Both the position numbers and the translations under genes were made by a program. From the IMG/VR virus record IMGVR_UViG_3300045996_002337, positions 186,001-250,000 of that record: a stretch of 64,000 nucleotides of DNA. The stretch is one strand, 5' to 3'. Below, one piece after another: positions 9,753 through 63,871 of the stretch. Each line of letters opens with the position of its first letter. Position 1 is the first letter of the stretch. Below the pieces are notes generated by a model. It saw only the letters and a program-made list of their open reading frames with translations. It did no database searches and was not told the DNA's origin.

Positions 9753-9879
9753 TGGTGGTGGCGGAAGGAATCGAACCTCCCCTGGCCGTTTATGAGTCGG
9801 ATAACCAATTACGGACGGTTGAGCTAACAACGAAAGGTGCAATCGATGTTTACCGTGCTGTCCACTACACTACGCCACC
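9753..9879 (-). ncRNA. tRNA/Y-RNA hybrid: tRNA acceptor, D and T arms with CCA, and a ~50-nt Ro60-helix-like domain in place of the anticodon arm
   Basis: GGTGGCG/CGCCACC-A-CCA, D arm, T loop TTCGATT; insert contains TCG-TTG[TTAGCT]CAA-C-CG and GGTTATCC/GATTGC, shared with the Y-like family. Confidence 0.6.
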
Positions 9880-12346: not shown

Positions 12347-12366
12347 ACAGAAATTTATGTCTTAAG

Positions 12367-12448
12367 CTCCACGATCTGGGCTCGAACCAGACTTGATCTT
12401 TCGATCGCGGATTAACAGTCCGCTGCCACACCCGGCGGCTCTCGTGGA
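12367..12448 (-). tRNA. tRNA-Asn(GTT)-like with long variable arm, no encoded CCA, flanks extend the acceptor stem
   Basis: GCGGA-CTGTTAA-TCCGC; GATC-GAAA-GATC variable arm; CTTAAGCTCCACGA/TCGTGGAGCTTAAG 14-bp stem. Confidence 0.65.
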
Positions 12449-12476
12449 GCTTAAGACACTTACATAATGTTCTTTG

Positions 12477-12548
12477 CTCCAGAGGCAGGGATCGAACCTA
12501 CGACGGACGCATTAACAGTGCGCTGCTCTACCGCTGAGCTACACTGGA
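12477..12548 (-). tRNA. tRNA-Asn(GTT), no encoded CCA
   Basis: Canonical cloverleaf; leader TGTTCTTTGC pairs with trailer GCAAAGAACA. Confidence 0.85.
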
Positions 12549-12984: not shown

Positions 12985-13078
12985 TGGCTCCCTCGGACGG
13001 ACTCGAACCGCCATATTACGCCTTACGGCCTTTACGTCTGATTAACAGTCAGGTCTCTTACCATTAGAGTACAAGGGA
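12985..13078 (-). tRNA. tRNA-Asn(GTT) with 24-nt variable region
   Basis: CT-GTT-AA; variable arm GCC-GTAA-GGC; G73; CCA. Confidence 0.8.
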
Positions 13079-17666: not shown

Positions 17667-17950
17667 CACATCACCTCGAAAGCAAAGTTGAGCAGTTCTT
17701 GGGCACCCCATAGATCGAAGGGCACAGGGTCAGGGGTTTCACCGCAGCAGAACTCTTCGAGCTCGGCAGGTGAGAGCTTCGAGAGGGCAATGTCCACCGC
17801 CTTGATGTCAGCTTCAGCATAACGCTCCTCGACGAGATGCATCACGTGGTTAACAACCGATTCCTCGGTCACCCCACGGTAAATGACGCCACTGTCGTAG
17901 GCAATCTCAATGACGGCCTTGATGAGCGATGGGTACTTGTGTGGGATCAT
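17666..17950 (-). CDS. hypothetical protein
   Basis: 94-aa ORF coupled to both neighbours. Confidence 0.6.
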   Translation of the reverse strand: MIPHKYPSLIKAVIEIAYDSGVIYRGVTEESVVNHVMHLVEERYAEADIKAVDIALSKLSPAELEEFCCGETPDPVPFDLWGAQELLNFAFEVM

Positions 17951-19014
17951 TTTGCAAGCTCGTTTGGAATGAAGGCGCGGCCGGCCCGCCAGTGTTTTTG
18001 CGTTTGAACATGATTGGCGCGAACGAACTTTGCCACGCTCTTGCGAAAATCGCCGTAGCTAAACTCACCAGCAATCCGAACCACGTAACCTTCGTCCTTT
18101 TCAAAGTCTAGACTCTTCTCAATGTCACGAACAGTTTTCTCATCCCACATGCCATCATAAAGAACTGGGACAGGTGTTAGGCCGAGCAGCTCACACCAGA
18201 CGATGGTGTCATCCCACCTCAAGCAGCGGTTCTTTGCATCCCAAATGCTAAAGCACATGAAGTATGAAGGCAGGGCGGTGTAGTGAATCGAGTGCTCGGC
18301 CCAGAGGTTCTCGCCGCAAACACGCCAGCCTTCAGGAAGATTGAAGCAGACGTTCTCGATCAGGAACTTCTTGACCCAGGCCCGGTCTTCGCCACCACGG
18401 CTGTCAATCGAACGTGCGTGAATGTGACCATCGCTGTACGCGGTGGTGTTCTCACCGTCCATCTTCTTGGTGATGACTACACGGCGACCTTCAAACTGCG
18501 AGCAGTCCTTCAGGGCTTTGTCGTCGTCTTGTTTTCCAGGAGACCAGGGGAGGTGGAACGTCCGCTCGTACTTGACGTACGAGGTAAACAGATCCAACGC
18601 TCCACCCGCGGCCAGAACTTTCTGTACGGACTCGTCAAAGAAGAGCTCGCCCTTGGCGCGGCGACCGTCAGCAAGTACTGGGTTTCCCCATTTGTCGTAC
18701 TGATGGTCAGGGTAGAAGTGCGGAGGAACCACGATCTTCGTGATGCCTGCTGCTTGACGCACGTCCTCGACCGAGTAGAACGTTTTCTCGCAGAGAAGAT
18801 GATGCAGCTCGCACACGGTCGCGCCGTTCTCGAGATAGTAGCCACCATCTGGCCACAGCCGCCGCTCGAGAATGTGATGCGCGTCGAGCTTGCCCTCAGG
18901 GGTTTGCGCTGCAGTGATTCCGCAGAAAACGCACTTGTGACCATCTCGAAGGAACACACCTTCGCGGAAGTTGTCTCGAGTAAGTAGTTTGGGCTCTGCC
19001 ATGTTATTCTCCAT
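17947..19014 (-). CDS. HNH-domain / RNA ligase fusion protein
   Basis: N-terminal CVFC...DAHHI...NGATVC-x-x-HH; C-terminal ligase motifs KMDGEN, CGEN, EGYVVR, K-F-V-R. Confidence 0.85.
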   Translation of the reverse strand: MENNMAEPKLLTRDNFREGVFLRDGHKCVFCGITAAQTPEGKLDAHHILERRLWPDGGYYLENGATVCELHHLLCEKTFYSVEDVRQAAGITKIVVPPHFYPDHQYDKWGNPVLADGRRAKGELFFDESVQKVLAAGGALDLFTSYVKYERTFHLPWSPGKQDDDKALKDCSQFEGRRVVITKKMDGENTTAYSDGHIHARSIDSRGGEDRAWVKKFLIENVCFNLPEGWRVCGENLWAEHSIHYTALPSYFMCFSIWDAKNRCLRWDDTIVWCELLGLTPVPVLYDGMWDEKTVRDIEKSLDFEKDEGYVVRIAGEFSYGDFRKSVAKFVRANHVQTQKHWRAGRAFIPNELAK

Positions 19015-33617: not shown

Positions 33618-34712
33618 TCAGGTCAGAGCACCAGCAATTGCTTCGCGGCGAGCCTGCTCAATTGCCTGACCGAGCTCCTTACCTGGAGGAATATCAGGAA
33701 AATCTGCAGCTTTAACTGGCTTTGTAACTGAGGCTGCCCTCCACAGATCAAAAGAGTTCACCTTAGGTGACTCACCAATCGATGGCATCAGTTCAACTGC
33801 TTGCACCAAATCATCGAAGGTAGAGCCTTCGCTCCATGCCTTCGCTGCTTTCAGTAAGTTGAAGACGTCATCAACGGTGCGTTCCATGGTTCGAACCCGA
33901 TTCACATTCTCAAACAGCGTTCGCGTGCGAGTGTCAGCGCTGACACGAACAGTGGTCGAAGACGGAACAGCTGCGAGCGCAGTGTGAAACATGACGCGTT
34001 CTGCTTCATCAACAAACACCGAGACTACTGACGCAGCGGCGATGACAGATTTCAGTCGAGCTGCATCAATGTGACCATACAGGCCTTCGAAGAACAAAAC
34101 GTTTTCATCGCAGTGCATGGCCTTCATGAGCCAGAAAAAGCGCCACGGTGTTTCTTCTTGGAAGACCTTGTGGAGCTCTGCCCAGAAGCGTTCAGCGGGC
34201 AGTTGATTCAGATCGCCGTTCTCGACCATGCGCTTCGCCAAATCCATCGTTTCGGTTGCAACACTGAAGTTGTCGTAGCGTGCAAAGAAGCGGGCTAGCC
34301 GCACCACCCGCAGTGGATCTTCACCGAAGGCAGCAGAGACGTGGCGCAGAACGCGCGCTTCCAGATCTTGCTGTCCACCCCAAGGATCGATGATTTTGCC
34401 GTCCTCATCCTCAGCCATCGCATTGATGGTCAGGTCTCGTCTCGACAGGTCGTCGGCCAGGGTCACACCGTCGGTTTCAACTGCGAAGCCGAGGTAGCCC
34501 TTGCCCGTCTTGCGCTCGGTTCTAGCAAGGGCGAACTCCTCACCACGTTCGTTCAGAAACACGGGGAAATCCGCACCCACCTGCTGAAAGCCCATGGCAA
34601 TCATTTGCTCGGGCGTGGAGCCGACAACGACGTAGTCAAAATCCTTCGGATCTCGCCCCATCAGCTTGTCACGAACTGCACCACCGACCGTGTAGACCTG
34701 ATATGTTTTCAT
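33618..34712 (-). CDS. cca: tRNA nucleotidyltransferase (class II CCA-adding enzyme)
   Basis: VGGAVRD...[45 protein letters not shown]. Confidence 0.92.
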
Positions 34713-34748
34713 AGATGCATTATACACTGCCCACTCTAGGTTGTAAAC

Positions 34749-37905: not shown

Positions 37906-38841
37906 TTAGATAAGGTCAGCCTTATTTATTGTCAGCGGTTCCACAGTTCGGAATTCTTTTTCAGTCGCCTGATAGAAAGTCCAGCTGCCCAGTTCAATGC
38001 AGGTAAGGGCACACCAGCCCCGGACCTTTATGTTGCCGCTGTAGCTCTGCTCACCGAATGAACCGTACGCACATGTATCGATGTTCGTCTGTCCGACAAT
38101 CGTGACTGGCCGCTGCATGATGGTGTGACCACTGATGATGTGCGACAACTTGTCGTTGAAGACAGCAGTGCCGTTTCGCAGCTTCAATGTGCGAATGATC
38201 TTTTCGCGGTTGCTTAGGTCGGCACGATAAAAATCGTAGAACAGATGGCGGCCCCACAGAAAAGAATCACCATCCCCGTTCTGCTTGGTCGCCAAGGCGT
38301 GAACCTTCTGCCCATCCGACAGAATTTCATCGGTTATGACGTTGCCTGGCGGCAGTTCGGCGTGGATCACATGGAACTTCTTCCCATCCGGTCGATTGAT
38401 CGTGATCATGAAAGGAAGGTTCTCAACGAAGGTCAGCAGGTCAATCAGCTCCATGTCCTCGTCACTGATCAGTGGCATGTGCTCAACACGCCCAGCTTCC
38501 TTCGCTTCAAGAGCGCGAGAAACGTTCCACGCCTCAGCTCCCCACATGCCACCGTTCTGGAACCAAAATTGCCCCATGTAGCCACCGCGAAACGCTTCAA
38601 GCATCATCTGCTCGTGGTTAGAGAGGACTGCATGGAACCAGGGCTTGCGTAGCAGGGCAAGGCAGCCAAGTGAATCTGGTCCGCGATCGACGAGGTCACC
38701 AACTGAGAACATTCGGTCCTTTGTGGAATCAAATGCAAGGTTCTCAAGCAGGTTCTCGAAGCATGCAAGTGATCCATGCAGGTCACCGATTACGAAGTCC
38801 CTACCATCGTTGTTTGGTTCAAATGTTTTGAGAATTGGCAT
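37906..38841 (-). CDS. metallophosphoesterase (lambda-PP/PphA-like Ser/Thr phosphatase)
   Basis: GDLHG, VGDLVDRGPDS, LSNHE, IHAE, SGHT. Confidence 0.9.
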   Translation of the reverse strand: MPILKTFEPNNDGRDFVIGDLHGSLACFENLLENLAFDSTKDRMFSVGDLVDRGPDSLGCLALLRKPWFHAVLSNHEQMMLEAFRGGYMGQFWFQNGGMWGAEAWNVSRALEAKEAGRVEHMPLISDEDMELIDLLTFVENLPFMITINRPDGKKFHVIHAELPPGNVITDEILSDGQKVHALATKQNGDGDSFLWGRHLFYDFYRADLSNREKIIRTLKLRNGTAVFNDKLSHIISGHTIMQRPVTIVGQTNIDTCAYGSFGEQSYSGNIKVRGWCALTCIELGSWTFYQATEKEFRTVEPLTINKADLI

Positions 38842-56224: not shown

Positions 56225-56332
56225 TGGCTCCCCAACCTGGGCTCGAACCAGGGACCTGCGGATTAACTAGAACACCCGATAAACCAGATGTTCGGTGTCA
56301 GTCCGACGCTCTACCAACTGAGCTATTGGGGA
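56225..56332 (-). tRNA. tRNA-Asn(GTT) interrupted by a 32-nt insertion in the anticodon loop
   Basis: Canonical Asn body; loop reads CTG[ACACCGAACATCTGGTTTATCGGGTGTTCTAG]TTAA; removing 32 nt restores CT-GTT-AA. Confidence 0.8.
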
Positions 56333-57481: not shown

Positions 57482-57618
57482 AAAGCATAGAAACAACAAA
57501 AGGCGCTATCGGGAATTCCTGCCCCTGGACCACCTGCAGGATGCCACGAATCGAACGGGCTTGGGTTTATTTCCAATAATAGTAGATAACCGACAACAAA
57601 CGGTTGATTCTATGCTTT
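57482..57618 (-). ncRNA. Y-RNA-like RNA with degenerate T-loop module
   Basis: AAAGCATAGAA terminal stem; CAA-C-CG / TTG-TTG helix; GTTATC/GATAGC; TTCGATT hairpin. Confidence 0.55.
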
Positions 57619-58318: not shown

Positions 58319-59266
58319 TTATCTCTCTACAATCACCAGCGTTCCCTTCTCAACGAGGTCAGCAACTTCAAGCGCGTCCCAGTTAGTGAGACGAATGCAG
58401 CCGTTAGAAGCGGTCTTTGAAATCTTTGAAGGTTCTGGTGTACCGTGAATTCCGTAATGCTTACGCGACAGCGCGATCCAGACTTCGCCAACTGGGTTGT
58501 TGGGGCCTGGACGAAGTGTTACCTTGGTGTTTGTCCCTGGGCTGACAAAGCGTTCAGGGTCGTAGTTGTAATACGGGTCCTTTGCGACTGCGACGACCTT
58601 CAGCTGACCAAACGGTGGAGGGCTCTTAGGAGAACCAAGCGTCGTTGGGTAGAAGCCGATAAGCTTCTCGCTGGCGTCATAAATGCGTACCGAACTTTCG
58701 GACTGGCTTACGACGATCTTCGCTACCTTCGTCGACAGGGTTTGCCCAACGCCCGGCACCTTGAGGACCGTGCCCTCAACAAGCTCAACGTCAGGATTCA
58801 ATTTCTTCAGCAGCTTCGGGCTGATCTGGAACTTCTCACCAAGCGCTTCTTCAAGCGACGTGTAGTGGAGATTGCCAGCCTTGCTCATACCCAGCATCGT
58901 ACGGGGGATTGAACGTTTGAGTGGCTGGTTCACATCTTCAGCCGTCAGTGTGTAGCTTACCATCAGGTCCGAACCGTTGTCACCCAGAGCGGTGAGGGTT
59001 GGCTGATCAATTTCTCCAGATGGCTCGAGACCTTTCTCTTGTTGGAAAGCTTTCAGCGAGCGCCGAACATTCGAACCCATCACGCCGTCAATTTCACCAA
59101 CTGAAAAGTGCCAACGATCGAGAAGGACTTGAACGCGTAGTGTCTGCGTGAACTCCTGTTCCTCGGTCATTTGTGGTGCTGAAGCAGGCTTAGCTGCTGG
59201 AGCAGGGGTCTGGGCCATCGCAGCAGAAACGCTGAGGGCCAAAAAGGTCATCAAGATCTTCTTCAT
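58319..59266 (-). CDS. L,D-transpeptidase (YkuD) with peptidoglycan-binding domain
   Basis: Signal peptide; QVLLD...GEIDG...ALKAFQ PG-binding domain; YGIHGT...ASNGCIRL. Confidence 0.92.
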   Translation of the reverse strand: MKKILMTFLALSVSAAMAQTPAPAAKPASAPQMTEEQEFTQTLRVQVLLDRWHFSVGEIDGVMGSNVRRSLKAFQQEKGLEPSGEIDQPTLTALGDNGSDLMVSYTLTAEDVNQPLKRSIPRTMLGMSKAGNLHYTSLEEALGEKFQISPKLLKKLNPDVELVEGTVLKVPGVGQTLSTKVAKIVVSQSESSVRIYDASEKLIGFYPTTLGSPKSPPPFGQLKVVAVAKDPYYNYDPERFVSPGTNTKVTLRPGPNNPVGEVWIALSRKHYGIHGTPEPSKISKTASNGCIRLTNWDALEVADLVEKGTLVIVER

Positions 59267-59311: not shown

Positions 59312-59433
59312 TGGAGCGCCGCCGAGGAATCGAACCTCTGATGCCAAGGTTGATCAGACCCAGCCTTATTTCCAACGTGAGTCACATCGATTGCTCGACA
59401 CTCACATGGTGCTACCATTACACCAAACAACGC
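59312..59433 (-). ncRNA. tRNA-like RNA without anticodon (GNRA-capped long arm)
   Basis: Acceptor plus T-CCA, D and T arms; GTGAGT-GTCGA-GCAA-TCGAT-GTG-ACTCAC replaces the anticodon arm; ~36-nt variable region. Confidence 0.6.
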
Positions 59434-59437
59434 ATAA

Positions 59438-59568
59438 AGCAACAAAGGAGCGATAACGAGTCTGCCTTTCGGCGAGGCGGCTGTCCTACCATTAGACTAC
59501 AGCTCATTGAGCCGGCGGGAATCGAACCCACGTTAACTGCTTGGGATAAACGTCATCTATCGGTTGCT
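59438..59568 (-). ncRNA. YrlA-like Y RNA (permuted tRNA module)
   Basis: GCAA-C-CGA...T arm (GTGGG TTCGATT CCCGC), acceptor closed by a loop (CGGCTC AAT GAGCTG), D arm (GTCT AATGGTA GGAC)...GCC-GAAA-GGC...TTG-TTGC. Confidence 0.75.
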
Positions 59569-59760
59569 AATCTTTTCACTCGGCCGGTGCGGTGGCTGAG
59601 GGCTTGGGCCACTTGTTAGGCTCCATTCCCCATGCTGCCCAGCGCTGCGCCCAAGTTGCCCAGTTCGTGGTGTTGTTGCCCGCGCACCGAATCGCACGTA
59701 GGGCCTCTTCCATCGAAGAAGGTTCTGTATTCAGGTCTTCGTTCATGCTGCGTTCCTTAT

Positions 59761-59847
59761 TGGTACGGGTGAGAGGATTCGAACCTCCATGGTCGCGATG
59801 ACCAACGCCTTCTGAAGACGCCGCGGCTCCCTTTTCGCCACACCCGC
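59761..59847 (-). tRNA. tRNA-Leu(CAG)
   Basis: TT-CAG-AA, variable arm, CCA. Confidence 0.8.
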
Positions 59848-60181
59848 AAATTTATGCGCCCACCTTCCGAGTACACGACTTCAAAGCATTCACCTTAGCA
59901 GCATAGTAGGATTGAGCTGACGTTCTCGAGTCCAACGAAATTAAGGCTTACTGTTCTCATGGGAAGTTGCCTCACGGACAGTTCATTCTACACGTTGACT
60001 AATTTGTAGTCAACTTGGAACACTGACAAACCAACCTGTTGACGGCGGGTGCCGGCTTTCAATTTATCGACACAGAAAAAGCGGGAACGGCTCTGTACTC
60101 CACAGCTCGAGGGAATTAGAGGGAACAGTGCGAAACTACTTCCCGAGGTCCTGCTTCCGCGGCCTCATATATCTAACTAAG

Positions 60182-60631: not shown

Positions 60632-60749
60632 TGGTGGGGACTCGTGGGCTCGAACCACGGACCTACTAGATGTCTACTTTCTGCATGGACAATGGGCGCC
60701 GTTCCATGCAGTTTCGCTCTAATCGCTCTACCAACTGAGCTAAGTCCCC
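60632..60749 (-). ncRNA. tRNA-like RNA with a hairpin inserted in the anticodon loop
   Basis: Near-consensus acceptor, D and T arms plus CCA; loop holds a CTGCATGGA/TCCATGCAG hairpin; no clean 7-nt anticodon loop. Confidence 0.65.
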
Positions 60750-62520: not shown

Positions 62521-62613
62521 TGTTGAACGACGGGATTCGAACCCGCACATTGCGCCGGTGATTAGCCGGTGCTAAGTATACCAATTCCTCACGTTATGCA
62601 AACACGTTCAACA
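62521..62613 (-). ncRNA. tRNA-like RNA, anticodon AAT, 9-bp acceptor, 12-nt insert before the D arm
   Basis: TGTTGAACG/CGTTCAACA; CT-AAT-CA loop; T arm intact; no CCA. Confidence 0.55.
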
Positions 62614-62663: not shown

Positions 62664-62794
62664 AGCAACAAAGGGCGATAACGAAAAGCCTTTCGGCGAG
62701 CCGGCTGCCTTACCACTTGGCGACTATCAATTGCTCGATAGGTAGGATTCGAACCTACGTTTAGCTGGATAGATAATCATCATCAACGGTTGCT
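62664..62794 (-). ncRNA. YrlA-like Y RNA (permuted tRNA module)
   Basis: GCAA-C-CG...T arm (GTAGG TTCGAAT CCTAC), 7-bp acceptor capped by GCAA tetraloop, D arm (GCC AAGTGGTAA GGC)...GCC-GAAA-GGC...TTG-TTGC. Confidence 0.8.
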
Positions 62795-63781: not shown

Positions 63782-63871
63782 TGGTGGATGCTGTCCGAAT
63801 CGAACGGACCTTAATGCTCAAAGCATTCATAAGCAAGTAACTTATGCCCACTCGTACCAACTACCACATCC
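63782..63871 (-). tRNA. degenerate Ser-like tRNA (anticodon ACT)
   Basis: CATAAG-TTACTTG-CTTATG arm, long variable hairpin, T arm, CCA; bulged acceptor. Confidence 0.45.

What the first reader, a model, noticed from the sequence alone, without database searches (positions are those of the whole stretch)
59312..59433. CCA-ending tRNA mimic whose anticodon arm is a GNRA-capped long hairpin
Seen: acceptor, D and T arms and T-CCA are retained, but no decoding loop is possible, and there is an extra long variable arm. It lies immediately downstream of a YrlA-like RNA. Inference: a non-decoding tRNA mimic, such as a decoy for tRNases, EF-Tu, RelA or T-box-like sensors.
Basis: partly seen in the sequence, partly recalled or inferred. 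Interest (0 to 1): 0.6.

Follow-up and report, generated by a model that had tools for sequence, protein, structure and literature searches.

The report
Odd tRNA look-alike beside phage Y RNA
A giant phage that carries its own Ro60 protein and Y RNAs has, four bases after one Y RNA, a tRNA-derived gene that keeps the end of a tRNA but has a wrecked decoding arm; it most likely marks where the transcript is cut, and it has been seen in this one genome only.

Summary
The object is real. Window 59312-59433 (- strand) encodes a 122-nt RNA with a 7-bp acceptor stem, canonical D and T arms, U73 and an encoded CCA. No tRNA finder calls it.

The 13-bp GCAA-capped hairpin is better read as an insertion between the D arm and the anticodon-arm position. 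The supposed long variable arm is not stably folded. It contains a weak anticodon-like hairpin (loop CUGAUCA, C at position 37).

The upstream neighbour is a genuine 131-nt YrlA-type Y RNA that ends 4 nt before the element. The phage also encodes Ro60/Rsr.

A paralogous Y RNA elsewhere in the window is followed by a second pseudo-tRNA with loop CUAAUCA, so "Y RNA + Ile-like pseudo-tRNA" looks like a duplicated module. In related phages, Y RNAs are usually followed within 3-13 nt by an ordinary tRNA; in one relative it is tRNA-Gly, whose acceptor identity the element retains.

Best reading: a tRNA-derived, probably non-decoding element kept as an RNase P/CCA processing signal. A trans-acting mimic or decoy role is untested. 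No homologue was found and no expression data exist.

The parts
59312..59433 (-). The element X: a 122-nt tRNA-like RNA gene ending in U73-CCA
   Evidence: Sequence and fold. Not called by ARAGORN at default settings. No full-length Rfam tRNA match.
59427..59433 (-). Acceptor 5' strand GCGUUGU. It pairs 7/7 with 59316-59322 (GCGGCGC); three pairs are G-U.
   Evidence: G1-C72, C2-G71, G3-C70 and U73 occur together only in the phage's two tRNA-Gly genes.
59408..59424 (-). D arm GGUGU-AAUGGUA-GCACC, with G18 G19
59375..59407 (-). Long hairpin: 8 bp, 3-nt GUG bulge, 5 bp, GCAA tetraloop. Read here as an arm inserted at the D-arm/anticodon-arm junction.
   Evidence: -13.4 kcal/mol, z = -2.6. Its 3' strand weakly resembles the 5' end of the neighbouring Y RNA (p about 0.02).
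59363..59374 (-). 12-nt linker UGGAAAUAAGGC
59346..59362 (-). Degenerate anticodon-like hairpin UGGGU-CUGAUCA-ACCUU ('GAU', C37)
   Evidence: Such a hairpin (loop CU[A/G]AUCA) next to a T arm occurs only here and at 62554-62570, across 9 phage genomes and all loci held. ARAGORN calls tRNA-Ile(GAU) once nt 27-71 are removed in silico.
59323..59339 (-). T arm (A)GAGG-UUCGAUU-CCUC(G)
59312..59322 (-). Acceptor 3' strand GCGGCGC, discriminator U73, encoded CCA
59438..59568 (-). Y RNA Y1: YrlA-type, 131 nt. Its ends pair AGCAAC/GUUGCU. It has a permuted T arm, acceptor-like hairpin and D arm, and the motif GCCGAAAG.
   Evidence: Rfam YrlA 39.1 bits, E 4e-7, below the gathering score of 69. Paralogue and orthologue alignment with compensatory changes. 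Model R2 scores 140.9 bits.
59434..59437 (-). 4-nt spacer UUAU between the 3' end of Y1 and G1 of X. This is the inferred RNase P site.
62664..62794 (-). Y RNA Y2, paralogue of Y1 (81% identity including flanks)
   Evidence: 127.3 bits
62521..62613 (-). Element E: a pseudo-tRNA after Y2. It has a 9-bp acceptor, an extra 15 nt after the acceptor, a D arm, the hairpin ACCGG-CUAAUCA-CCGGC, a T arm and no CCA. It is the likely paralogue of X.
   Evidence: ARAGORN calls tRNA-Ile(AAU) after removal of 10-15 nt.
58319..59266 (-). L,D-transpeptidase gene (YkuD + PG_binding_1, signal peptide). It starts 45 nt downstream of X, with no terminator-like site between.
59576..59746 (-). 56-aa ORF of unknown function between tRNA-Leu(CAG) and Y1
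59761..59847 (-). tRNA-Leu(CAG), the first gene of the presumed transcription unit
59985..60013 (-). Sigma-70-like promoter match (TTGACT-17-TAGAAT). Terminator-like hairpins lie at 58116-57969, after the transpeptidase gene.
   Evidence: These are consensus matches only.

Best explanation
X is a tRNA-derived gene that has kept the upper half of a tRNA: acceptor stem, D arm, T arm, and a U73-CCA end of tRNA-Gly type. It has lost a usable decoding arm. A 33-nt GCAA-capped hairpin plus a 12-nt linker sits where the D arm meets the anticodon arm. The anticodon arm itself survives only as a weak Ile-like hairpin (CUGAUCA, C37).

X belongs to a duplicated two-gene module, 'YrlA-type Y RNA + pseudo-tRNA', in the tRNA array of a roughly 350-kb phage that encodes Ro60/Rsr.

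Most likely mechanism (inferred): tRNA-Leu(CAG), a small ORF, Y1, X and the L,D-transpeptidase gene are transcribed together. RNase P cuts at G1 of X and thereby makes the 3' end of the Y RNA, leaving a 4-nt tail. 3' trimming to the encoded CCA separates X from the transpeptidase mRNA. X is thus kept mainly as tRNA-type punctuation. The released CCA-ended RNA would be stable, and whether it has any function in trans is open.
For: Shown:
- The tRNA upper half is intact and the body is non-canonical.
- Y1 ends 4 nt before X.
- The phage encodes a TROVE/Ro60 ORF and a CCA-adding-enzyme-like gene.
- Y1 has a paralogue Y2 and orthologues in related phages, with compensatory changes.
- Of 11 Y-RNA loci, 6 are followed by an ordinary tRNA 3-13 nt downstream and 6 are preceded by one 5-18 nt upstream. 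The three best-scoring loci are followed by non-canonical tRNA-likes instead.
- In G006 the Y RNA shares its last 22 nt with Y1, followed by UAU and then a canonical tRNA-Gly(GCC) starting GCG. X has the Gly-type acceptor (G1-C72, C2-G71, G3-C70, U73), otherwise found only in the phage's two tRNA-Gly genes.
- The hairpin with loop CU(A/G)AUCA beside a T arm occurs only in X and in E, each the first element after Y1 or Y2.
- No terminator-like or promoter-like site lies between Y1, X and the transpeptidase gene.

Precedent: M. smegmatis YrlA and YrlB are cut from one precursor, and YrlA is an RNase P and CCA-addition substrate (PMC4201824).
Against: - There are no expression data. Only two DNA runs hold parts of the region and none is RNA.
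- X is a singleton. No homologue was found in 22 related records or in viral, metagenome and genome scans.
- The transpeptidase neighbour is absent from relatives.
- In a near-identical strain, a contig matches only about 30 nt at X's 5' end at 80% or more, next to the tRNA-Leu gene. This suggests the body is not conserved.
- A punctuation role does not explain why the 13-bp hairpin is perfect.
- RNase P cleavage and co-transcription are inferred, not shown.
Confidence: 0.45

Rival explanations
1. X is evolutionary debris: a decaying or chimeric tRNA pseudogene produced by duplication, insertion and recombination in a fast-turning-over tRNA/Y-RNA array, with no function of its own.
For: - X is a singleton with no detectable homologue.
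- The array holds many other broken or expanded tRNA-like pieces, at T-loop positions 62533, 63323, 61625 and 64221, plus a tRNA 5'-half-like fragment after Y2.
- The 36-nt region has no stable fold.
- There are three G-U pairs in the acceptor and a mismatch in the T stem.
- X and E have diverged far more than Y1 and Y2.
- Short Y-RNA-like words occur in the hairpin and in the 3' trailer (UCGUUAUC), as expected of recombination scars.
Against: - All seven acceptor pairs, the D and T loops (G18 G19, UUCGAUU), U73 and CCA are intact.
- All three acceptor deviations from Watson-Crick pairing are G-U, so pairing is kept.
- The 13-bp hairpin is flawless.
- The loop CU(A/G)AUCA is kept in both paralogues while their stems differ by double changes.
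Confidence: 0.25
2. X is a trans-acting tRNA mimic. After processing, the CCA-ended RNA would bind a tRNA-recognising partner. One version is a decoy for toxins or enzymes that act on the acceptor end or elbow. Another is a second Y-like RNA (a YrlB analogue) that works with the phage Rsr.
For: - The part of a tRNA read by RNase P, the CCA enzyme, EF-Tu and acceptor-end toxins is intact.
- X is adjacent to, and probably co-transcribed with, a Y RNA in an Rsr-encoding phage.
- Bacteria have a second Rsr-bound RNA with a T arm next to YrlA (PMC4201824).
- A related viral contig carries a Y1-type Y RNA in unpermuted tRNA topology that also ends U-CCA (L335:4200-4335). CCA-ended tRNA-shaped Y RNAs therefore exist in this group.
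- The hairpin's 3' strand resembles the 5' Rsr-motif region of Y1 (p about 0.02).
Against: - X lacks the GNCGAAN0-1G motif, and also the AACCG...GGUUAUC signature shared by all Y RNAs and tRNA-Y chimeras of these phages.
- It is not conserved.
- There is no normal anticodon loop for anticodon nucleases.
- No phage Fem-type aminoacyl-tRNA transferase was found.
Confidence: 0.15
3. X is a working decoder: a tRNA-Ile(GAU) carrying an extra arm at the 26/27 junction, like the tRNA-Y chimeras of related phages.
For: - ARAGORN at default settings calls a 77-nt tRNA-Ile(GAU) once nt 27-71 are removed in silico. Among deletion variants this is the commonest call, 53 against 52 for Ser(CGA).
- Relatives have tRNAs with a roughly 45-nt arm at the same junction followed by good anticodon loops: CUCUUAA, CUACGAA, CUCAUAA.
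- The paralogue E has the matching loop CUAAUCA.
Against: - Position 37 is C. It is a purine in virtually all tRNAs, and t6A37 is expected for Ile (established knowledge).
- The stem has a U.U and a G.U pair and adds only about -3 kcal/mol.
- The discriminator is U73 with a Gly-type acceptor, not the A73 of tRNA-Ile.
- Other in-silico deletions give Ser, Asp or Pro calls, so the reading is not unique.
- The phage already has tRNA-Ile(GAU) and tRNA-Ile(UAU).
Confidence: 0.08
4. The hairpin is a short intron that is spliced out to give a normal tRNA.
For: - Other tRNA genes in this genome carry 32-40-nt hairpin inserts in the anticodon loop, at 56225-56332 and 60632-60749.
- The phage encodes an RNA ligase and a phosphoesterase.
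- Removing the inner 14 nt would leave a loop GU-GUG-AC.
Against: - The phage has no tRNA splicing endonuclease and no RtcB.
- The insert is far too short for a group I intron.
- After any such removal, a 36-nt extra region or a non-canonical loop remains.
Confidence: 0.02

Closest known systems
YrlB, the second Y RNA encoded next to YrlA (S. Typhimurium, M. smegmatis; Chen et al. 2014, PMC4201824)
   Same: A second small RNA with a T arm lies directly beside a YrlA-type Y RNA in a genome that encodes Ro60/Rsr. In M. smegmatis both are cut from one precursor, and YrlA is an RNase P and CCA-addition substrate.
   Different: X has a complete acceptor stem, a D arm and an encoded CCA, which YrlB is not described as having. 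It lacks the GNCGAAN0-1G motif present in YrlB. Rsr binding is untested. There is no sequence similarity.
tRNA-type processing signals (tRNA punctuation; tRNA-like 3'-end signals cut by RNase P, such as MALAT1 mascRNA). Recalled from established literature.
   Same: A tRNA-shaped element with no decoding role whose recognition by RNase P defines the 3' end of the upstream non-coding RNA.
   Different: Those examples are eukaryotic or mitochondrial. Here the upstream RNA is a phage Y RNA, and cleavage has not been shown.
Phage T4 RNAC and RNAD, small stable RNAs of unknown function transcribed from the tRNA region (PMC3014915, PMC9697503)
   Same: Non-tRNA small RNA genes embedded in a phage tRNA cluster, with function unknown.
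   Different: No sequence relation was tested or expected. T4 has no Ro60 or Y RNA.
tRNA-Y RNA chimeras of the related phages ('J-type', described here: window 9753-9879 and six others, alignment A4)
   Same: Same topology: an extra arm of about 45 nt between the D arm and the anticodon arm of an otherwise tRNA-shaped, CCA-ending RNA.
   Different: Their arm is conserved (AAACAUCG..CCUUUGUUG-loop-CAACCG..GGUUAUC, that is, a closed-up Y-RNA terminal stem) and their anticodon loops are canonical. X has neither.
Non-proteinogenic tRNA-Gly of staphylococci, used for cell-wall bridges (recalled)
   Same: A Gly-type acceptor end on a tRNA not meant for the ribosome. X sits next to a peptidoglycan cross-linking enzyme gene.
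   Different: Those tRNAs keep a normal anticodon arm. No Fem-type transferase is encoded by this phage. This is a lead only.

Membership tests
tRNA (Rfam RF00005; canonical decoding tRNA) | Cloverleaf that scores at or above the Rfam gathering score (29 bits), or is called by ARAGORN at default settings | tested here: not met
   No full-length tRNA match at gathering score, at E<=0.1 over 9 kb, or at E<=10 over 561 nt. The only match inside X was a 15-nt T-arm hit to a tmRNA model (9.9 bits), with one lower-scoring same-clan match left out. ARAGORN at default settings gives no call.
tRNA (Rfam RF00005; canonical decoding tRNA) | 5-bp anticodon stem with a 7-nt loop, U33 and a purine at position 37 | tested here: not met
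   The canonical position holds a 13-bp hairpin with a 4-nt loop. The alternative hairpin has U33 but C37 and a U.U pair.
tRNA (Rfam RF00005; canonical decoding tRNA) | Acceptor stem of 7 bp, D arm with G18 G19, T arm with UUCRANY loop, 3' CCA | tested here: met
YrlA / bacterial Y RNA (Rfam RF02553) | Permuted tRNA-like domain (T arm, acceptor-like hairpin, D arm) closed by a long 5'/3' terminal stem | tested here: not met
   X has normal tRNA order. The neighbour at 59438-59568 meets this feature.
YrlA / bacterial Y RNA (Rfam RF02553) | GNCGAAN0-1G motif (putative Rsr contact) | tested here: not met
   No match in X; the nearest is GUCGAG. Y1 and Y2 carry GCCGAAAG (motif from PMC4201824).
YrlA / bacterial Y RNA (Rfam RF02553) | Bound by Ro60/Rsr | not testable with these tools
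   The phage encodes Rsr, but binding needs a pull-down.
Phage tRNA-Y chimeras ('J-type', this report) | Conserved inserted arm with AAACAUCG, CCUUUGUUG, CAACCG and GGUUAUC boxes | tested here: not met
   Alignment A4 and motif scan. Only weak similarity of X's hairpin 3' strand to the 5' end of Y1 (p about 0.02).
Phage tRNA-Y chimeras ('J-type', this report) | Extra arm inserted between the D arm and the anticodon arm of a CCA-ending tRNA-shaped RNA | tested here: inconclusive
   The topology fits if the CUGAUCA hairpin is the anticodon arm. The alternative reading, hairpin = anticodon arm, is not excluded.
Intron-containing tRNA | Removing one insert yields a canonical tRNA, and a splicing system is present | tested here: not met
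   No unique solution among 176 ARAGORN-positive in-silico deletions. No splicing endonuclease or RtcB.
tmRNA tRNA-like domain | Acceptor/T-arm domain joined to a tag reading frame and pseudoknots | tested here: not met
   Only 15-18-nt T-arm matches to tmRNA models. ARAGORN in tmRNA mode finds nothing. The phage's tmRNA lies elsewhere.

The most novel reading that the evidence does not exclude
X and its paralogue E are functional partners of the phage Y RNAs. In this reading they are a new class of CCA-ended, non-decoding tRNA mimics with a Gly-type acceptor, a conserved CU(A/G)AUCA loop bearing C37, and an added GNRA hairpin. They would be made from the same precursor as the Y RNA and would act in trans, for example with Rsr and the phage's RNA-repair enzymes, or as bait for host factors that attack the acceptor end or elbow of tRNAs.
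Probability: 0.15. Interest if true: 0.7.

Novelty: new variant of a known kind. Interest (0 to 1): 0.45.

Why it matters
Taken alone, X is one unconserved pseudo-tRNA. Its context is more informative. A clade of roughly 350-kb freshwater and soil phages encodes Ro60/Rsr and many Y RNAs inside their tRNA arrays. These phages appear to use tRNAs, or tRNA remnants such as X, as the cutting marks that release the Y RNAs.

The same phages also carry tRNAs with a Y-RNA stem grafted between the D and anticodon arms, and Y RNAs in unpermuted, CCA-ending tRNA topology. This gives a natural series of intermediates between tRNA and Y RNA. [quoted passage not shown]

If X proved to be stable and bound by a partner, it would extend the repertoire of phage tRNA mimics.

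Tried and rejected
- blastn of the region against 50,697 phage records: no match.
- megablast of 20 kb: only tRNA hits.
- Exact 25-mer of the T arm/acceptor in viral contigs and in 185,579 prokaryote genomes: none. An attP-type copy of a host tRNA 3' end is therefore unsupported.
- Exact 26-mer of the 5' part in JGI metagenomes: none.
- Covariance model R1 (X alone) over 23 phage records and over 34 loci found with a D-arm/T-arm gapped pattern: only ordinary or otherwise expanded tRNAs.
- Synteny through the L,D-transpeptidase: absent from relatives. Metagenome hits are bacterial genes of 47% identity or less over the full length.
- Exact-protein look-ups of both neighbouring ORFs: only the source contig.
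- Specific 31-mer of the upstream tRNA-Leu in viral contigs: none.
- Rfam YrlA search in relatives: mostly false hits spanning two adjacent tRNAs. It was replaced by model R2.
- Sequencing runs: two freshwater DNA runs with small shares and no RNA. Laid contigs cover only about 30 nt of X.
- Ribozyme idea (CUGAUCA against the hammerhead CUGANGA core): no Rfam support, and the essential G is missing.
- Cell-wall tRNA idea: no FemAB or Acetyltransf_6 in the phage.
- Protein-coding reading of overlapping ORFs: no Pfam or PHROG hits.
- Homology of X to the G005 tRNA-like element: weak (middle p about 0.05).
- MAFFT alignment of X with the region after Y2: uninformative. The paralogy claim rests on position and the shared loop, not on overall identity.

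Full report
SETTING. The window is bases 186001-250000 of a 349,660-bp IMG/VR virus record (GC 51%, estimated 97% complete). ARAGORN finds 51 tRNA genes and a permuted tmRNA in the genome, nearly all in two arrays on the - strand, with 47 tRNA genes in the window. The window also encodes a CCA-adding-enzyme-like protein, an RNA ligase and a metallophosphoesterase. A TROVE/Ro60 (Rsr) ORF of 566 aa lies about 3 kb upstream of the window. No RtcB and no tRNA-splicing endonuclease were found.

THE OBSERVATION. On the - strand, 59433->59312 gives a 122-nt RNA:
- acceptor GCGUUGU/GCGGCGC, 7 pairs of which three are G-U;
- UU;
- D arm GGUGU-AAUGGUA-GCACC;
- a 33-nt hairpin (8 bp, GUG bulge, 5 bp, GCAA loop);
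- 36 further nt;
- T arm GAGG-UUCGAUU-CCUC;
- U73 and an encoded CCA.

The tRNA upper half is beyond chance. The element is nevertheless not a canonical tRNA. ARAGORN at default settings misses it. Rfam reports no full-length tRNA match in any of three searches; the only match inside it is a 15-nt T-arm hit to a tmRNA model. The long hairpin is more stable than shuffles (z = -2.6). The 36-nt 'variable arm' is not (z = 0.05). ORFs overlapping the element hit no protein family.

THE NEIGHBOUR. Rfam's YrlA model matches 59447-59563 at 39 bits (E 4e-7), below its gathering score. Comparison with a paralogue at 62664-62794 (81% identity including flanks) and an orthologue in a related phage (G005:55287-55416) shows a 131-nt RNA at 59438-59568:
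- its ends pair (AGCAAC/GUUGCU);
- it has the permuted T arm, acceptor-like hairpin and D arm of YrlA;
- it carries GCCGAAAG, a match to the GNCGAAN0-1G motif linked to Rsr binding (PMC4201824);
- 8 of 31 predicted pairs show compensatory changes.

Only four bases (UUAU) separate its 3' end from G1 of X.

IS X CONSERVED? I found 37 viral contigs that encode a relative of the phage Rsr at 55-78% identity. I then searched 22 of those records. No search found X elsewhere:
- blastn over the 22 records;
- a covariance model of X over the same records;
- exact and gapped patterns in IMG/VR;
- a 26-mer in JGI metagenomes;
- a 25-mer in GTDB genomes.

The closest relative's contig ends before the syntenic array. 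The downstream L,D-transpeptidase gene is absent from relatives. Two freshwater DNA runs hold a near-identical strain. Their contigs match only about 30 nt at X's 5' end, joined to the tRNA-Leu gene. No RNA run exists. X is therefore a singleton at present.

WHAT THE RELATIVES DO SHOW. A model built from three Y RNAs (R2) finds Y RNAs in most Rsr-encoding relatives.
- Of 11 loci, 6 are followed by an ordinary tRNA 3-13 nt downstream, and 6 are preceded by one 5-18 nt upstream.
- The three best-scoring loci (Y1, Y2, G005) are followed by non-canonical tRNA-like elements.
- In G006 the Y RNA has the same last 22 nt as Y1, then UAU, then a canonical tRNA-Gly(GCC) starting GCG.
- X starts GCG and has G1-C72, C2-G71, G3-C70 and U73. 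In this phage that combination otherwise occurs only in its two tRNA-Gly genes. These are the acceptor identity elements of E. coli tRNA-Gly (established knowledge).

X is thus the positional counterpart of a tRNA that follows the Y RNA.

RE-READING THE ANATOMY. Related phages and this one carry tRNA-shaped, CCA-ending RNAs with a conserved arm of about 45 nt inserted between the D arm and a normal anticodon arm. The arm is the terminal stem of the Y RNA closed by a loop (AAACAUCG..CCUUUGUUG-loop-CAACCG..GGUUAUC; seven examples). X lacks these boxes. If its long hairpin is read as an arm at the same junction, the next 17 nt form UGGGU-CUGAUCA-ACCUU, 6-7 nt before the T arm. A hairpin with loop CU(A/G)AUCA next to a T arm occurs only twice in nine phage genomes plus all loci held. 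One is X. The other is element E (62521-62613; ACCGG-CUAAUCA-CCGGC), the first tRNA-like element after Y2. The two stems differ by double changes while the loop is kept.

ARAGORN at default settings calls X without nt 27-71 as tRNA-Ile(GAU). It calls E without 10-15 nt after its acceptor as tRNA-Ile(AAU). This supports a duplicated module 'Y RNA + Ile-like pseudo-tRNA'. Both loops have C at position 37, and X has U73 rather than the A73 of tRNA-Ile. Other in-silico deletions of X give Ser, Asp or Pro calls. Decoding therefore seems unlikely, and the assignment is not unique.

MECHANISM. A promoter-like site lies upstream of tRNA-Leu(CAG), at 60013-59985. Terminator-like hairpins follow the transpeptidase gene. 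Nothing of either kind lies between Y1, X and that gene (consensus matches only). Y RNAs in these phages are regularly flanked by tRNAs. M. smegmatis YrlA and YrlB are cut from one precursor, and YrlA is an RNase P and CCA-enzyme substrate.

The most economical reading is that X is retained as an RNase P/3'-trimming signal. It would set the Y RNA's 3' end and free the downstream mRNA. This explains why exactly the RNase P-relevant half of the tRNA is intact while the decoding half is not. It is an inference, and it does not explain the flawless 13-bp hairpin.

The rivals are pure debris, a trans-acting mimic or second Y-like RNA, a decoding tRNA with an extra arm, and a spliced intron. They are weighed in the structured fields. 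Weak hints of kinship between X's hairpin and the 5' end of Y1 (p about 0.02), and a Y1-type Y RNA in unpermuted U-CCA-ending tRNA topology on another viral contig (L335:4200-4335), keep the mimic reading alive.

COMPARISON AND VERDICT. X is not a member of tRNA, YrlA, tmRNA or the tRNA-Y chimera group by their defining features. It works most like a tRNA-type processing signal. It sits where YrlB-like second RNAs sit. Phage T4's RNAC and RNAD are a loose precedent for non-tRNA RNAs in phage tRNA clusters.

It is a new variant of a known kind and moderately interesting, mainly for the system around it. 

Noticed in passing
window 9753-9879 (-); also G001:217768-217895, G015:18239-18363, G008:309616-309744 and 309382-309512, G003:55344-55473, G004:14321-14450: These are tRNA-shaped, CCA-ending RNAs with a conserved arm of about 45 nt inserted between the D arm and a normal anticodon arm (loops such as CUCAUAA, CUCUUAA, CUACGAA). 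The arm is a closed-up Y-RNA terminal stem (AAACAUCG..CCUUUGUUG-loop-CAACCG..GGUUAUC). They look like tRNA-Y RNA chimeras. I found no description of them in the papers searched.
   Followed up: partly
L335:4200-4335 (+) (IMGVR_UViG_3300025597_000014): A Y1-type Y RNA in unpermuted tRNA topology: a real acceptor stem, D arm, Y stem with GCCGAAAG closed by a loop, GGUUAUCCCAAGCAG box and T arm, ending U-CCA, with no anticodon arm.
   Followed up: partly
window 62664-62794 (-) and 57492-57608 (-): Further Y RNAs in the same phage: Y2 (127 bits with model R2) and a weaker, divergent Y3 (28.5 bits). Many more carriers of the AACCG...GGUUAUC motif occur in relatives, several per genome.
   Followed up: partly
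G005:55162-55275 (-): A 114-nt non-canonical tRNA-like element (acceptor, T arm, CCA, odd D and body) lies 11 nt after the orthologue of Y1. Its similarity to X is weak (p about 0.05).
   Followed up: partly
window 56225-56332 (-) and 60632-60749 (-); G015:73304-73408 (-): tRNA genes with 31-40-nt hairpin inserts inside the anticodon loop: tRNA-Asn(GUU) with 32 nt placed next to G34 (between U33 and G34 by eye, one base later by ARAGORN), a tRNA with a 40-nt insert, and a tRNA-Gly(GCC) in a relative. The phage has no splicing endonuclease or RtcB.
   Followed up: partly
window 12366-12448, 12476-12548, 12985-13078, 56225-56332 (-): Four tRNA-Asn(GUU) genes. Only one is of normal length; two have expanded variable regions (83 and 94 nt).
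   Followed up: no
G018:120643-120749 (+) and G005:60382-60498 (-): tRNA-like RNAs (GCGCGUG... acceptor, A-CCA end) with a second T-arm-like hairpin in the variable region. The G005 copy also carries GUCGAAAG, a match to the Rsr-linked motif.
   Followed up: no
G000:258611-258769 and 259276-259675 (outside the window): Two tRNAs with anticodon CUA (amber suppressors by anticodon) and a permuted tmRNA. Possible TAG recoding was not examined.
   Followed up: no
window 63782-63871 (-): A tRNA with anticodon ACU (A34, 'Ser'). Tool-called tRNA-like elements in relatives also have A34 anticodons such as AUG and ACU.
   Followed up: no
window 17947-19014, 33618-34727, 37906-38841 (-); G000:181253-182953 (-): An RNA-repair and tRNA-maintenance set in the phage: RNA ligase, CCA-adding-enzyme-like nucleotidyltransferase, metallophosphoesterase, and Ro60/Rsr.
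   Followed up: partly
window 58319-59266 (-): A phage-borne secreted L,D-transpeptidase (YkuD + PG-binding domain). It is absent from 22 related phage records. The nearest full-length relatives are bacterial, at 47% identity or less.
   Followed up: partly
L139:7407-7514 (-) (IMGVR_UViG_3300032136_000009): A solitary 108-nt tRNA-like element with the same D arm as X, a 13-bp interrupted hairpin in the anticodon position and a U-CCA end. It lies in a 13-kb stretch with no tRNA gene and no Y RNA.
   Followed up: partly
L120, L121, L109, L141, L122, L123, L108, L113, L116: tRNA-like genes of 112-127 nt in unrelated large viral contigs share an insert after the D arm (..AAAAAUCGGUUAUCU-loop-AGAUACGGACAGCAAUU..). 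In some, a normal anticodon arm follows (for example Asp GUC). This is another family of expanded phage tRNAs.
   Followed up: no
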